Virus record (IMG/VR): IMGVR_UViG_3300049793_000366
Span: 1 to 64,000 of that record
Length of the DNA stretch: 64,000 nucleotides
Direction: 5' to 3' (one strand)
Numbering within the stretch: position 1 is the first letter of the stretch; each line of letters opens with the position of its first letter. Below are positions 5,298 through 61,191 of the stretch, one piece after another. The notes beneath the pieces are model-generated. The model was not told where the DNA came from. It saw only the letters and a program-made list of their open reading frames with translations, and searched no databases. Both the position numbers and the translations under genes were made by a program.

Positions 5298-5774
5298 ATG
5301 AGTATGAACAGAAATAGGGAATATACTAAGGAATTAGCCCAGCGTATTAAGCTTCACTATGAGCATTCCGACTTCAGTAAAAAGTTTATAGAAACTTTAC
5401 TTGAGGATAGAAAATACTGCACTGATAGAATACTCAAAATAGCCAGCGAAGAGTTTAATCGAACACTTTCACATAAAGATGCAATCACGGTTCTACAATA
5501 TGTTCAATTAAATATACATAGACTTGCGGAAACAAGTGGTGTATATGCTGATAGTAGAACAATCGATGCTGTTATGTTTGGTGAACAAGAAGAAGAGATA
5601 AATTACACAAAATTAAACTTCGTACCATCTGCTAAAATCCTATATGATGAAGGATTTTATACAGAAAGCATGAAGCGTTATGGTAATAGTGGGTATATCG
5701 GTTATAACTTAGATTACATCGGTGTTAAAGTAGACCTAAGTGAAGATATTTTAGATTCAGCTCTTACTTATTAA
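5298..5774 (+). CDS. hypothetical protein
   Basis: 158-aa ORF with upstream promoter. Confidence 0.65.
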   Translation: MSMNRNREYTKELAQRIKLHYEHSDFSKKFIETLLEDRKYCTDRILKIASEEFNRTLSHKDAITVLQYVQLNIHRLAETSGVYADSRTIDAVMFGEQEEEINYTKLNFVPSAKILYDEGFYTESMKRYGNSGYIGYNLDYIGVKVDLSEDILDSALTY

Positions 5775-6792
5775 ACCTGTTATAGGCTTGTGTAGTAATC
5801 TGAACGAAGTTTGCATTGCCTTTGAACTCTTCAATCGTTCTGAATCCACAATAGCTCATGTTAGATTTTAAATAATCAGTGAAGTTTTCAACCCAAGAGT
5901 TAAGTGAGTATTCTACTCTATTATATTTAGTGATTCCCTCAGCAGTTTTCAAATCGTCTTTCTTCCAAGTCTTTTGAACTTCTTTAGTTGACATTCCTCT
6001 GTAATACTTATAAATATCTTCACCTAAAGAAAAGCGATTTAAAGCGTCTTCTGAGCCAATTTTGATATATTGCTCACCTACTTTAGTATAACTGTCTGAA
6101 ACGCTCTCTAAACACTTATTAAGTATACCACCAATCATAACTGCATCGGCACCTAAGCCAATTGCTTTTATTATATCAGAGAAGTTTCTAAATCCACCAT
6201 CAGCTATAATCTTAGTAGGATTAGTAAACTCTTTACTGATTACACCACATTCGAATATCAGTGATGCCATAGGGTAGTGAATTGCTACATTAGCTGACGT
6301 TGTGCAAGCAGAACCACCACCAATACCACAGCGCACCCAATCAACACCAATTTTACAAAATTCTCTGTATGTTTCTGGGTTAGCGATATTACCAACCATT
6401 AACTCAACATCGTATTCTTTTTTAATTCGAGAAGCTATATCAAATAACTTCTTCATATGCCCATTCGCGATATCAATAAGAACTTTTTTGGGTAATAATT
6501 TACCCGCTTCTACAATTTCGATTATCTCGTCTAAACCATATGCGTAAAATAAATGTGTATTGCTACCTGTGAAGTTGATACCTCTCGGTAGACAAATATT
6601 TATACCCTTTTCATAAAATTGATTAGCATTATCAGAGCCAATAACAGTGTCCATTGGTGCTGTGAAGAGTGGTAACATATTGATACCATTCTCTACTTTA
6701 AGTGTTGGGCTTACTTCTTTGCGACTATCTATATCACTAATTGTTGCCGGAACAATAGTAATATCGTTCCAATCGAATTTAACTTGACTCAT
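5764..6792 (-). CDS. IMP dehydrogenase/GMP reductase family enzyme (probably GMP reductase)
   Basis: TAPMDTV, DIANGH, GIGGGSACTT catalytic loop, IIADGG, YRGMST..AEG; no CBS domain and no flap RY dyad. Confidence 0.85.
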   Translation of the reverse strand: MSQVKFDWNDITIVPATISDIDSRKEVSPTLKVENGINMLPLFTAPMDTVIGSDNANQFYEKGINICLPRGINFTGSNTHLFYAYGLDEIIEIVEAGKLLPKKVLIDIANGHMKKLFDIASRIKKEYDVELMVGNIANPETYREFCKIGVDWVRCGIGGGSACTTSANVAIHYPMASLIFECGVISKEFTNPTKIIADGGFRNFSDIIKAIGLGADAVMIGGILNKCLESVSDSYTKVGEQYIKIGSEDALNRFSLGEDIYKYYRGMSTKEVQKTWKKDDLKTAEGITKYNRVEYSLNSWVENFTDYLKSNMSYCGFRTIEEFKGNANFVQITTQAYNRFNK

Positions 6793-6821
6793 TTATGTTA
6801 TTTCTTTTTAAGAGGATCCTG

Positions 6822-7085
6822 TTATGGATAGATTGTATAATCCTCTTCAATAGTTACTTCTGCGAATTTGTAACCATCATTTTTCTTAGCAACAAAAAAT
6901 AGTTCGACTGTCTTAAGCTTCAATTCATCAGAATCTTTACCTACTAAAAGAACGTTGAATTCTTTCTCCCACTTCTTACCTATATTATAGGCTTCTGACA
7001 ATTTTTCAATAGCCGTTCTTGATGATTTGTGTGAGTCATAATAAAGTCTTACACTTGCTTCGAATGTTCTGTTCTTAATTTCCAT
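6822..7085 (-). CDS. hypothetical protein
   Basis: 87-aa ORF in a minus-strand gene run. Confidence 0.6.
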   Translation of the reverse strand: MEIKNRTFEASVRLYYDSHKSSRTAIEKLSEAYNIGKKWEKEFNVLLVGKDSDELKLKTVELFFVAKKNDGYKFAEVTIEEDYTIYP

Positions 7086-59197: not shown

Positions 59198-59284
59198 TTT
59201 TCCATTGCTTATTTTTATAAGTCTTATAGAAGTTGTATTTCCAAAAGTTTAATATATACTAAAATTAAGTCCTGTAAGAACTGT

Positions 59285-59797
59285 ATGAAATACATTAAAA
59301 TGTTTGAAAATTACGATGAGCGATTTTCTAAAATAGAAAGAGTTTTGCGTAGTTTAAACTTTAGAAAGAATAGAGATCCTAAGCCTATACATATCGTTGG
59401 TGGTGGTAATGGTAGTGGTAAAATGCACTCAATTAAAACTGTATTAGACCAGATGGACGAGGAATATATTATAATAAATACAAACGAAGCTACACCAACA
59501 TCATTCTATATGACCTTATATGAGTATAGTGATAGTGATACTATCGTTGTTATTGATGAGATGTGTAATAATTCAAGCACTAATAATCAAGCAAGAATAA
59601 ACAAAACCATTGCTCAATTGTGTAAGGGTGAAATGATAACACATCCATATCCCAATGCTCCAAATCCACCTAATACTATATTACAATTTGAATTTAAAGG
59701 AAGAGTAATATTATCAACAGCAGATTTGACAAATACCAGAGATATTAGTGGACTATACGATAAAAATTTAAACACTATATTTTTGGGATTTAGTTAA
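59285..59797 (+). CDS. short degenerate AAA-like ATPase with MKYIKMFE leader
   Basis: GGNGSGKM Walker A variant, VVIDE, FEFKGRVILST; resembles the 44799 protein. Confidence 0.55.
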   Translation: MKYIKMFENYDERFSKIERVLRSLNFRKNRDPKPIHIVGGGNGSGKMHSIKTVLDQMDEEYIIINTNEATPTSFYMTLYEYSDSDTIVVIDEMCNNSSTNNQARINKTIAQLCKGEMITHPYPNAPNPPNTILQFEFKGRVILSTADLTNTRDISGLYDKNLNTIFLGFS

Positions 59798-59800
59798 AGT

Positions 59801-59826
59801 AAAAAATCCAGTCATTGACTGGATTT
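59801..59826. terminator. bidirectional intrinsic terminator
   Basis: AAATCCAGTC-ATT-GACTGGATTT. Confidence 0.8.
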
Positions 59827-59827
59827 C

Positions 59828-59954
59828 TGGTCTCATTTATCACCGTAACTCGTAAGCAAGAAGACCAATTCTCTTACTCACCACCTAATGAACAACAGAT
59901 ATTAATCTGAGCCCCATCTTTCCGATGGCATGATAAAGTGTATCTCTCGATACA
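59828..59954 (-). ncRNA. putative structured ncRNA downstream of tmRNA
   Basis: GAGA-tetraloop hairpin; closing stem TTTATCAT/GTGATAAA enclosing three hairpins; possible TGGTCT/AGACCA pseudoknot. Confidence 0.5.
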
Positions 59955-59955
59955 G

Positions 59956-60348
59956 GGTGGAGAAGACGGGAATCGAACCCGTGTCCAATGATATCAGTGA
60001 ACTACTTTCTACAAGTTTATTTTAGTTTTCTAACTAAACCAAATAATCAATTTTTTTAACGACTAAAGAGATAATATGTCGCCGATTCAGTTATATACCA
60101 CTTGTGTCGAGAACTGTGGTTCCGAAGATTTTGTCGATTTTAAGCAATCTCAAGTTCTTCAACTTGAGTAGCAGTAGTCTTAGACTTTGCTAATACACTT
60201 AAAATATCGGATAACGATCCGACTTCGTTTGTAATTACGTTGCCGTTTACAGATTTTATCTACTAATTTATTAATCGCACGTTTTATTAGACAAAGCGAT
60301 ACTTGCTTATAACTCTCATCTCATCACCGTCGAAGCCTTAACTTCCCC
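59956..60348 (-). ncRNA. ssrA: tmRNA
   Basis: 5' GGGGAAG pairs with 3' CTTCTCC-A giving G3:U; TTCGAC D-loop analogue; T arm ACGGG-TTCGATT-CCCGT; internal tag frame 60244-60140. Confidence 0.93.
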
Positions 60349-60368
60349 GTTTACTGATTAAAGTATGA

Positions 60369-60377
60369 TATATATTA
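60369..60377 (-). promoter_or_regulatory. putative late promoter of tmRNA
   Basis: TAATATATA 20 nt upstream of the tmRNA 5' end. Confidence 0.6.
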
Positions 60378-60411
60378 CAATGGAAAAGGAAAGTTTTTCT
60401 ATTTTGAATAT

Positions 60412-61143
60412 TTATTTTCTTAATTTATCTTGTTCATCCATTATTCTCAACATTTCTGGTTCATTACCAGCTTGAATAGCCTTTCTCAACTCTTTATTTA
60501 AGTCATCATATCTTTTATTATTAGCCCACTTTTGTAATTCACCTTCATCACTACCTAAGCCATATCCATACCTATATACTTGAATAACTAATAATAAAAG
60601 CTCTGGATATTCTTCATCTTCATGGTCTTCTATAAACTTTTTATAAATATTTCTATCATTTATTGATTGTTGTATATCTATACACGTAGCTAATACCGAT
60701 CCAGATTTTATCTCTGGCCCTTTATAGTTTAACTTCTTATCATCTATTTTATCAAAATTAGCCATCTTCATCATATCCGACATTAGCTCTTGAAAATCCA
60801 CTCTGAAATCTGAATTTGGATTTAATGGTTTATGATAACCAATACTATACCCAACATTAATTATGTATGCTACTAATTGCTGAGTGGATGATTTTGGTGT
60901 ATTAAATATCTCAGTATATGTAATATCACCGAAGTGTTCATCAATAATACTTTTTATTTTATTATCATCAAGATAATCTAATTGATAGTTTGTTGTTATT
61001 AGTTTAGTTATAACATTCACAAATTCTACTAAATGTTCCTTAGCATATTCAACGTCAGCTTGTGTACTAGCATTCATAGCCGCTATTTGTTTATCAAGCT
61101 CATCTCTATCAAAGCTTTCGTTAAATTTCTTAAGATATTTCAT
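60412..61143 (-). CDS. hypothetical protein, N-terminal MKYLKKFNES
   Basis: True start likely 61143; TAATATATA at 61149-61157. Confidence 0.7.
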   Translation of the reverse strand: MKYLKKFNESFDRDELDKQIAAMNASTQADVEYAKEHLVEFVNVITKLITTNYQLDYLDDNKIKSIIDEHFGDITYTEIFNTPKSSTQQLVAYIINVGYSIGYHKPLNPNSDFRVDFQELMSDMMKMANFDKIDDKKLNYKGPEIKSGSVLATCIDIQQSINDRNIYKKFIEDHEDEEYPELLLLVIQVYRYGYGLGSDEGELQKWANNKRYDDLNKELRKAIQAGNEPEMLRIMDEQDKLRK

Positions 61144-61156
61144 ATAATTATATATT

Positions 61157-61191
61157 AAAAAAGCCACTTAAATTTCTTTAAGTGGCTTTTT
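61157..61191 (-). terminator. intrinsic terminator
   Basis: AAAAAGCCACTTAAA..TTTAAGTGGCTTTTT. Confidence 0.8.

What the first reader, a model, noticed from the sequence alone, without database searches (positions are those of the whole stretch)
59828..59954. Unassigned structured RNA between tmRNA and its terminator
Seen on the minus strand: hairpin TGTATC-GAGA-GATACA directly after the tmRNA 3' end. Then a stem TTTATCAT(59937-59930)/GTGATAAA(59843-59836) encloses CCATC-GGAAA-GATGG, CAGAT-TAAT-ATCTG and GTAAG.AGAA-TTGGTC-TTCT.CTTAC. The last loop region (TGGTCT) is complementary to AGACCA (59833-59828) outside the stem, which would form a pseudoknot. No ORF lies here and the region is GC-richer than the intergenic background. 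Inference: a co-transcribed ncRNA, possibly a ribozyme or processing element for tmRNA 3' maturation, or a protein decoy.
Basis: partly seen in the sequence, partly recalled or inferred. Interest (0 to 1): 0.7.

Follow-up and report, generated by a model that had tools for sequence, protein, structure and literature searches.

The report
New structured RNA behind phage tmRNA
Right after the tmRNA gene of a roughly 0.5-0.7 Mb soil phage lies a conserved, intricately folded non-coding RNA that matches no described RNA family, and it looks like an independent passenger RNA carried on the tmRNA transcript, not a tool for finishing the tmRNA.

Summary
Window 59827-59954 (minus strand) holds a hairpin P0, then a four-way junction (P1-P4). 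A pseudoknot joins loop L4 to the tail behind P1, and an intrinsic terminator follows (59801-59826).

Homologues turned up only in a few uncultivated relatives: L008, L018/L019, L009/L010, and partial contigs from four public sequencing runs. In a hand-curated alignment of three full sequences, 101 of 102 pair cells are paired. Thirteen of 34 pairs changed on both sides and stayed paired, including one pseudoknot pair (G-C to A-U). P1 is 100% invariant. No Rfam family matches any of the three homologues.

The idea that it matures the tmRNA 3' end is weakened:
- In L009 the tmRNA ends in its own terminator, and the element sits about 0.8 kb away behind a methylase gene, with its own promoter-like motif and terminator.
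- Other relatives have the tmRNA without the element.

Best reading: an autonomous structured RNA of a new family. In this window it is transcribed as the tmRNA 3' trailer and probably released when the tmRNA 3' end is cut. It probably acts in trans through its fold. Its partner and function are unknown, and no expression data exist.

The parts
60366..60398 (-). Promoter-like motif upstream of the tmRNA (AAAAACTTTCC ... TGTAATATATAT). Presumed start of the transcription unit that includes the element.
   Evidence: Conserved upstream of the tmRNA in window, L008, L018, L009 and L022. A similar motif precedes the detached L009 copy of the element. It is not a genome-wide motif. Its function as a promoter is inferred.
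59955..60348 (-). tmRNA gene. Its 3' end reads ...CUUCUCCACCC, so CCA is not encoded.
   Evidence: Rfam RF00023, 83.6 bits, full model. ARAGORN.
59939..59954 (-). P0 hairpin UGUAUC-GAGA-GAUACA, directly after the tmRNA.
   Evidence: Kept in L008 and L018. In L009 another hairpin (AUCCC-GCACA-GGGAU) sits 7 nt before P1.
59930..59937 (-). P1 5' strand, UUUAUCAU.
   Evidence: Pairs with 59836-59843. 8 of 8 pairs in all homologues and 100% invariant in sequence.
59914..59928 (-). P2 hairpin CCAUC-GGAAA-GAUGG.
   Evidence: L009 has UCUAC/GUAGA: 3 of 5 pairs changed on both sides and stayed paired.
59891..59913 (-). P3: basal GGC/GUU plus hairpin CAGAU-UAAU-AUCUG (59896-59909).
   Evidence: Five stem versions, all pairable: CAGAU/AUCUG, UAUAU/AUAUA, UAAGU/ACUUA, ?AGAU/AUCUA and UGAAU/AUUCA.
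59852..59881 (-). P4 stem-loop. Basal stem GUGAGUA/UGCUUAC. Loop L4 contains UUGGUC at 59863-59868.
   Evidence: A 7-bp stem is kept with other sequences in L008 (AUAAGGU/GCCUUAU) and L009 (UAAGCCC/GGGCUUA).
59836..59843 (-). P1 3' strand, GUGAUAAA.
59827..59833 (-). Tail AGACCAG, the pseudoknot partner of L4.
   Evidence: Window UUGGUC/GACCAG. L009 UUAGUC/GACUAA, where G-C became A-U on both sides.
59801..59826 (-). Intrinsic terminator AAAUCCAGUC-AAU-GACUGGAUUU followed by a U run.
   Evidence: It forms together with the element in the MFE. An equivalent terminator follows the element in L008, L018 and L009.

Best explanation
Window 59827-59954 (minus strand) encodes an autonomous, tertiary-structured non-coding RNA of a family not described so far.

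Anatomy. A 5' hairpin P0 is followed by a four-way junction. The junction is closed by a sequence-invariant 8-bp stem P1 and carries hairpins P2, P3 and P4. A 5-7 bp pseudoknot between loop L4 and the tail just 3' of P1 locks the fold. A constitutive intrinsic terminator follows.

Shown:
- The fold is present.
- It is conserved and covaries in relatives.
- It lies on the tmRNA strand.
- It is single-copy in the genome.
- It belongs to no Rfam family.
- In a relative it can be separated from the tmRNA.

Inferred:
- In this phage it is made as the 3' trailer of the tmRNA primary transcript, using the tmRNA promoter and the only terminator.
- It is set free as an RNA of roughly 150-160 nt when the tmRNA 3' end is cut. 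That cut has to happen in any case, because the gene reads ...ACCC instead of ...ACCA. The phage carries its own CCA-adding-type enzyme and SmpB.
- P0 and the terminator hairpin would protect the two ends of the released RNA.
- It then acts in trans through its folded shape, as a binding site for a protein or a small ligand. It does not act by linear base pairing, because its loops are not conserved while its junction strands and P1 are.

The partner is unknown. One candidate, from co-occurrence only, is the orphan 243-251 aa protein encoded just upstream of the tmRNA.
For: Structure:
- Separate MFE folds of the window, L008 and L009 cores all give the same four-way junction.
- In a curated three-sequence alignment, 101 of 102 pair cells are paired and 13 of 34 pairs changed on both sides and stayed paired. 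Sliding the 3' partners by 1-3 positions drops pairing to 36-46 of about 100 cells.
- The pseudoknot shows a G-C to A-U exchange.
- Further P3 variants in contigs of four other runs are also pairable.

Homology:
- A covariance model built without L009 finds the L009 copy at E = 1.7e-5 in the syntenic interval.

Strand:
- Folding energy is -37.8 against -23.3 kcal/mol for the opposite strand, and G-U pairs occur in P1, P3 and P4.

Autonomy:
- In L009 the tmRNA (5757-6142) has its own terminator. A methylase gene (6214-6894) follows, then the element (6928-7026) with an upstream motif like the tmRNA promoter and its own terminator.
- The element is absent next to the same tmRNA family in L022/L023, L004/G001 and L006.

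Co-transcription in the window:
- There is no spacer and no promoter-like site between the tmRNA and the element.

Processing context:
- CCA is not encoded. A CCA-adding-type gene and an SmpB gene are present in the genome.

Constraint beyond pairing:
- UUUAUCAUG and CGGUGAUAAAU are invariant, although the core is only 67% identical between window and L009.
Against: - No transcript evidence at all. No RNA run holds the element.
- Only three clearly distinct full-length sequences plus fragments are known, all from one small phage clade. P1 never varies, so P1 has no covariation support.
- The structure was derived from the same sequences it is scored on.
- The P4 columns of L009 are aligned by position in the stem, not by sequence.
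- Release by 3' processing, action in trans and any partner are inferences.
- The candidate protein partner rests only on co-occurrence inside one syntenic block. Its structure model was unusable (pLDDT 45).
- The promoter-like motif before the L009 copy has a spacing about 3 nt shorter than the tmRNA one and is untested.
Confidence: 0.55

Rival explanations
1. A cis-acting element for the tmRNA. It would either be a new self-cleaving ribozyme that cuts at or near its own 5' edge and so defines the tmRNA 3' end, or a structure that directs or blocks host RNases to shape or stabilise the tmRNA precursor.
For: - It begins one base after the tmRNA in window, L008 and L018.
- The tmRNA gene lacks CCA and therefore needs 3' cutting.
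- A compact pseudoknotted junction with invariant junction nucleotides is typical of small ribozymes.
- There is a precedent: HDV-like theta ribozymes lie beside phage tRNA genes and are proposed to process their 3' trailers (PMC10879173).
- A 5'-cutting ribozyme could equally free the L009 copy from the upstream methylase mRNA.
Against: - In L009 the tmRNA ends directly in its own terminator and the element is 0.8 kb away.
- L022/L023, L004 and L006 carry the same tmRNA family without it. tmRNA maturation therefore does not need it.
- No hammerhead, twister, twister-sister, pistol, hatchet, hairpin or HDV model matches at E up to 10 in any of the three homologues.
- The strand order of the helices does not fit the HDV nested double pseudoknot.
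Confidence: 0.17
2. A riboswitch-type aptamer whose expression platform is the terminator. It would control read-through into the D12 adenine methylase gene, which lies downstream in the same orientation in all relatives.
For: - A four-way junction plus a 3' pseudoknot immediately followed by a terminator is classical riboswitch anatomy (SAM-I/IV-like in outline).
- In L009 the order is promoter-like motif, element, terminator, about 80 nt, then the D12 methylase gene.
- Methylases use SAM.
Against: - In window, L008 and L018 a gene on the opposite strand lies between the terminator and the methylase. In the window the methylase is divergent from that gene, which leaves only an 87-nt intergenic region for its promoter.
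- A conserved promoter-like sequence lies downstream of the terminator in both L009 and the window.
- The element and the terminator form together in the MFE, with no conserved alternative (anti-terminator) pairing.
- No SAM, SAH or other riboswitch model matches.
Confidence: 0.07
3. A degenerate tRNA or tRNA-like mimic (cloverleaf-shaped). It would serve as a decoy or substrate for tRNA-handling enzymes or for host anticodon nucleases, or be a Y-RNA-like module.
For: - The outline is cloverleaf-like: a closing stem of 7-8 bp followed by U-G, then three hairpins.
- It lies next to a tRNA-like gene.
- The genome holds 61 tRNA genes.
Against: - ARAGORN calls nothing here.
- The middle hairpin loop has 4-5 nt instead of 7 and varies in sequence.
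- The third hairpin has no T-loop consensus and pairs with the tail instead.
- 7-8 extra nucleotides separate P4 from P1.
- ACCA in the tail is not conserved (GACUAA in L009).
- No YrlA or Y_RNA match in the window, and no Ro/TROVE gene in the genome.
Confidence: 0.08
4. No RNA function. The region would be a chance-foldable spacer, or a DNA-level element such as inverted repeats for a recombinase or a replication or packaging site.
For: - No expression data exist.
- P1 is an invariant inverted repeat at the DNA level.
- The family is tiny.
Against: - Thirteen pairs changed on both sides and stayed paired, including a pseudoknot pair that a DNA cruciform would not need.
- G-U pairs work on one strand only.
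- The two strands fold with strongly different energies.
- The covariance model finds the element in the syntenic interval of a relative whose tmRNA is 77% identical and whose neighbouring protein is 44% identical.
Confidence: 0.04

Closest known systems
HDV-like theta ribozymes next to phage tRNA genes (PMC10879173)
   Same: A compact pseudoknotted RNA placed directly 3' of a phage tRNA-type gene, on the same transcript.
   Different: The helices are not ordered as a nested double pseudoknot. No HDV-type Rfam model matches. A relative carries the element detached from the tmRNA. Self-cleavage is untested.
sRNAs released from tRNA precursor spacers, e.g. E. coli 3'ETS-leuZ (my own knowledge; mentioned in 10.1101/2021.04.25.441314)
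   Same: An RNA expressed as the trailer of a tRNA-type gene, freed by the processing of that gene and ending in the operon's terminator.
   Different: 3'ETS-leuZ acts by linear base pairing as a sponge. Here the loops are variable, while the junction and P1 are conserved, which points to shape recognition.
SAM-I / SAM-IV riboswitch aptamers (Rfam RF00162, RF00634)
   Same: A multi-helix junction closed by P1, with a pseudoknot that involves a hairpin loop, directly followed by an intrinsic terminator.
   Different: No match to the core consensus. The pseudoknot partners differ. There is no competing anti-terminator, and in this window there is no downstream gene to regulate.
wcaG RNA motif (RF01761)
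   Same: It occupies the equivalent place, between the tmRNA and the terminator, in sister phages L006 and L004. This shows that the tmRNA trailer of this phage group carries different RNA modules.
   Different: It has a different architecture (two tandem GUUU-hairpin-UGGUG units). The L006 match is only 25.4 bits, below the gathering score of 42. There is no match in the window.
tRNA / bacterial Y-RNA-like (YrlA) tRNA mimics
   Same: A cloverleaf-like outline and a position next to a tRNA-like gene in a phage.
   Different: It fails the anticodon-loop and T-loop features. There is no Rfam match and no Ro60/TROVE partner gene.

Membership tests
tmRNA (RF00023) | The region is part of the tmRNA model (tRNA-like domain, pseudoknots, tag frame). 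| tested here: not met
   The full model (positions 1-374) is already satisfied by 59955-60348. The element lies outside it.
tRNA | A 7-nt anticodon loop, a T-loop UUCRANY with a 5-bp T stem, and the acceptor stem directly joined to the T arm. | tested here: not met
   ARAGORN finds no tRNA here. The P3 loop is 4-5 nt and variable. The P4 loop is UUGGUC or UUAGUC and pairs with the tail. There are 7-8 nt between P4 and P1.
HDV-like / theta ribozymes | A nested double pseudoknot (P1, P1.1, P2, P3, P4) with the cleavage site at the 5' end of P1. | tested here: not met
   No HDV-type model matches at E up to 10 in window, L008 or L009. The observed helix order (P1 closing, then three hairpins, then the L4-tail pseudoknot) does not fit.
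HDV-like / theta ribozymes | Self-cleavage activity. | not testable with these tools
   This needs an in vitro transcription and cleavage assay.
Other small self-cleaving ribozymes (hammerhead, twister, twister-sister, pistol, hatchet, hairpin) | A match to the family's covariance model and conserved core. | tested here: not met
   cmscan with permissive filters at E up to 10 lists none of them in three homologues.
Riboswitch (any Rfam class, e.g. the SAM clan) | A known aptamer consensus. | tested here: not met
   No riboswitch family is among the matches.
Riboswitch (generic) | Mutually exclusive aptamer and terminator folds, and a regulated gene downstream. | tested here: not met
   The element and the terminator coexist in the MFE. 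The next gene in the window is on the opposite strand.
wcaG RNA (RF01761) | Two tandem GUUU-hairpin-UGGUG units. | tested here: not met
   There is no wcaG match in the window. It is seen only in relative L006, at 25.4 bits against a gathering score of 42.
Y RNA-like (YrlA, RF02553) | A match to the model and a Ro60/TROVE protein partner. | tested here: not met
   No YrlA match in the window. No TROVE domain in the 508-kb record, while the control genomes did respond.
Intrinsic terminator | A GC-containing stem followed by a U run. | tested here: met
   A 10-bp stem with a 3-nt loop followed by U6 at 59826-59801. The simple scan did not list it, so this rests on the sequence and the fold.

The most novel reading that the evidence does not exclude
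The element is the founding member of a new class of catalytic or ligand-binding RNA. One version is a self-cleaving ribozyme that frees itself, and with it the tmRNA 3' end, from whatever lies upstream. The other is an aptamer that senses a metabolite. In either case huge phages would load it onto the tmRNA transcript to manipulate host translation or RNA metabolism.
Probability: 0.15. Interest if true: 0.8.

Novelty: new variant of a known kind. Interest (0 to 1): 0.55.

Why it matters
Huge phages carry large sets of translation genes. This one has 61 tRNAs, a tmRNA, SmpB and a CCA-adding-type enzyme. Their non-coding RNAs beyond tRNA and tmRNA are almost unexplored.

This element is a compact RNA with a four-way junction and a pseudoknot. 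It has clear covariation, an invariant closing stem and no known family. That profile usually marks a ribozyme, an aptamer or a specific protein-binding RNA.

The comparison also suggests a general point. The 3' trailer of the phage tmRNA gene serves as a docking place for different structured RNAs: this element here, and wcaG-like hairpins in sister phages. Those RNAs would be expressed and released for free by tRNA-type processing.

If the function can be found, it may reveal a new way in which phages interfere with host RNA or translation.

Tried and rejected
Searches for homologues that found nothing:
- GenBank phages, blastn in distant mode with the tmRNA plus the element: no match.
- IMG/VR pattern scans with the tmRNA 3' end, with element motifs and with a three-block degenerate element pattern: no hits.
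- The tag-end pattern hit only protein-coding look-alikes.
- Two scans of the genome collection: nothing.
- The metagenome scan gave only the L004 twin, L006 and one chance hit.

Searches through neighbouring proteins:
- The convergent 170-aa protein found no related locus in IMG/VR.
- The 251-aa protein found one truncated IMG/VR locus, L003.
- The VWA and D12 methylase neighbours are widespread in T4-like huge phages, but the loci fetched have other gene orders and no element.

Other checks:
- A second copy in the own genome or in the 482-kb relative G001: none.
- Rfam: only sub-threshold hits that differ between homologues and are mostly driven by the terminator.
- Ro/TROVE partner: none.
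- Structure of the co-occurring 243-aa protein: AF2 pLDDT 45, so no fold search was made. The Atlas search gave nothing usable.
- P1 strand words are not enriched in the genome.
- The upstream AAACTTTCC...TATATA motif is not a genome-wide promoter consensus.
- Expression: no RNA run holds the element. The RNA-labelled runs laid hold only relatives of the tmRNA.
- Kin or host genomes could not be searched, because no relatives are drawn for a virus record and L009's record is not held.

Ideas rejected:
- A T-box-like or tRNA-3'-end mimic reading of UGGU/ACCA. The L009 copy has UUAGUC/GACUAA, so ACCA is not conserved.
- A small ORF starting at the AUG behind P1, or at the AUG in its 5' strand. 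These frames are not conserved between homologues.

Full report
**Context.** The window is the first 64 kb of a 507,910-bp IMG/VR virus record from a soil metagenome. GC is 33%. The record holds 61 tRNA genes and one tmRNA. The protein database places the same genes on a 711,805-bp contig. The record also encodes SmpB and a CCA-adding-type nucleotidyltransferase. The tmRNA lies at 59955-60348 on the minus strand (Rfam 83.6 bits, full model; ARAGORN). Its 3' end reads ...CUUCUCCACCC, so CCA is not encoded.

- P0 at 59954-59939.
- P1 at 59937-59930 with 59843-59836.
- P2 at 59928-59914.
- P3 at 59909-59896.
- P4 at 59881-59852, with UUGGUC in its loop.
- The complementary tail AGACCAG at 59833-59827.
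- An intrinsic terminator at 59826-59801.

The 128-nt element folds by itself into exactly this four-way junction (-37.8 kcal/mol, z = -3.0). The opposite strand folds much worse (-23.3 kcal/mol, z = -1.67). GC peaks here at 0.425. No Rfam family matches, even with permissive settings.

**Finding relatives.** GenBank phages and IMG/VR hold nothing close.

Public reads showed relatives of the tmRNA in sediment, wastewater and rhizosphere runs. Some of these contigs run on into the element with a different but pairable P3.

Through the neighbouring 251-aa protein, which has only three clusters among 5.8 billion proteins, I fetched two kinds of locus:
- L008, whose protein is 69% identical.
- L009/L010, whose protein is 44% identical. 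These lie on a 709-kb contig of an NCBI MAG.

Through the VWA neighbour I fetched L018/L019. L008 and L018 carry the element directly behind their tmRNA.

A covariance model built from the window and L008 alone then found a divergent third version at L009:6928-7026 (27.8 bits, E = 1.7e-5).

**Structure is under selection.**
- Between the window and L008, almost all differences fall in the P3 and P4 stems and keep the pairing.
- L009 also changes P2 (CCAUC/GAUGG to UCUAC/GUAGA), P3 and P4.
- L009 changes the pseudoknot as well: UUGGUC/GACCAG becomes UUAGUC/GACUAA, a G-C to A-U exchange.
- In a hand-curated alignment of the three distinct full sequences, 101 of 102 pair cells are paired. Of the 34 pairs, 13 changed on both sides with pairing kept, 2 changed on one side, 18 are invariant and 1 has an unpaired cell.
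- Sliding the 3' partners by 1-3 positions leaves only 36-46 paired cells of about 100.
- Each core sequence folded on its own gives the same topology.
- G-U pairs and the strand asymmetry in folding energy place the RNA on the tmRNA strand.
- P1 and its flanks (UUUAUCAUG and CGGUGAUAAAU) are 100% invariant, although the core is only 67% identical between window and L009. This suggests a sequence-specific role beyond pairing.

Caveats:
- Few independent sequences are available.
- The structure was derived from the same sequences it is scored on.
- P1 has no covariation.
- The P4 columns of L009 are aligned by position in the stem.
- The CM-made alignments (A3, A5) misplace one P3 strand of L008. 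I therefore counted pairs on my own alignment, whose rows were checked to be true substrings of the sequences.

**What it is not.**
- It is not part of the tmRNA model.
- It is not a tRNA. The loops have the wrong size and sequence.
- It matches no known ribozyme or riboswitch family in any of three homologues.
- It is not a wcaG motif and not a Y-RNA-like RNA. The genome has no Ro/TROVE gene.
- It is single-copy in the genome and absent from a complete 482-kb relative.

**The link to the tmRNA is loose.**
- In L009 the tmRNA (5757-6142) is followed at once by its own terminator. An N6/N4 methylase gene comes next (6214-6894). Only then comes the element, which is preceded by a hairpin and by a motif resembling the conserved tmRNA promoter motif, and is followed by its own terminator.
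- L022/L023 have the same tmRNA family with only about 30 nt before the next gene.
- L004 and L006 have other trailer contents, including tandem hairpins that resemble the wcaG motif (25.4 bits, below gathering).

tmRNA maturation in this phage group therefore does not depend on the element. The element is a self-contained module of hairpin, junction with pseudoknot, and terminator.

In the window it can only be co-transcribed with the tmRNA: there is no spacer and no promoter-like site between them. The tmRNA 3' end must be cut and given CCA in any case. The simplest model is that this cut releases the element as a stable small RNA of roughly 150-160 nt, protected by P0 at one end and the terminator hairpin at the other. 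This step is inferred, not shown.

**Function.**
- A terminator-controlling riboswitch is unlikely. The element and the terminator coexist in the MFE, there is no conserved alternative pairing, and in the window the next gene is on the other strand. The D12 methylase further downstream has a conserved promoter-like region of its own.
- A linear antisense sRNA is unlikely, because the loops vary while the junctions are conserved.
- That leaves a shape-dependent role: binding a protein or a ligand, or catalysis.
- The orphan 243-251 aa protein upstream of the tmRNA occurs in exactly the lineages that have the element. This may be no more than shared descent, and its structure could not be modelled.
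- There are no expression data.

**Verdict.** This is a real, conserved, pseudoknotted four-way-junction RNA of a new family, restricted so far to a small clade of uncultivated huge phages. In this window it is a passenger on the tmRNA transcript. The proposed role in tmRNA 3' maturation is not supported by the comparative data, although self-cleavage remains untested.

Noticed in passing
window 60140-60244 (-), inside the tmRNA: The tag reading frame looks conserved at the protein level well upstream of ARAGORN's 16-aa tag. Window, L008, L018 and L009 share GNVITNEVGSLSD(I/V)LSVLAKS...QVEELEIA. L004 and L006 have GNVITNEVGS(K/R)ADVLAVLK..., with synonymous and conservative changes. The real tag may therefore be about 34-37 aa. 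Part of this stretch also forms a hairpin (60223-60206), so RNA structure could explain some of the conservation.
   Followed up: partly
L006:504-598 and L004 about 1395-1490: In sister phages with the same tmRNA family, the trailer between the tmRNA and the terminator carries two tandem hairpins (GUUUGUCC...GGACUGGUGGA). They resemble the wcaG RNA motif (RF01761, 25.4 bits, E 0.0076, below the gathering score of 42). L004 has a further 200 nt or so of possibly structured trailer. The tmRNA trailer seems to be a slot for different RNA modules.
   Followed up: partly
window 60412-61167 (-); L008:44-793; L018:5768-6466; L009:5001-5708: An orphan 232-251 aa, mostly helical protein sits directly upstream of the tmRNA. 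It has only three clusters among 5.8 billion proteins and no Pfam or PHROG match. It occurs in the same lineages as the RNA element and is absent from G001. The AF2 model is of low confidence.
   Followed up: partly
window 59285-59797 (+): The convergent 170-aa gene encodes a small P-loop-like protein with a Walker A-like GGGNGSGKM and a Walker B-like IVVIDE. It has only weak PHROG ATPase hits. It is present in window, L008 and L018. In L009 an N6/N4 DNA methylase gene on the other strand occupies this place.
   Followed up: partly
G000 whole record (e.g. 121630-121702, 118344-118712, 177791-178204): The record has 61 tRNA genes in arrays, including one with anticodon CUA (a UAG suppressor, which ARAGORN labels Pyl). 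It also has SmpB and a CCA-adding-type enzyme. IMG/VR labels the record a provirus, but the protein database places the same genes on a 711,805-bp contig.
   Followed up: no
window 59955-59957 (-): The tmRNA gene ends in ACCC, not ACCA. Relatives do not encode CCA either (L009 ...CCACUA, L004 ...CCACUG). The 3' end must therefore be trimmed and rebuilt.
   Followed up: partly
contig with P0010, no DNA held: A more distant relative in this group of T4-like huge phages encodes a Ro60/TROVE protein with a vWA domain near its VWA gene. The window's own phage has no such gene.
   Followed up: partly
window 59198-59284 and L009:7060-7148: A conserved promoter-like sequence, AAACTTT ... TCTATAA ... 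TATAAAAATAAGCA, lies upstream of the D12 adenine methylase gene in both phages.
   Followed up: no
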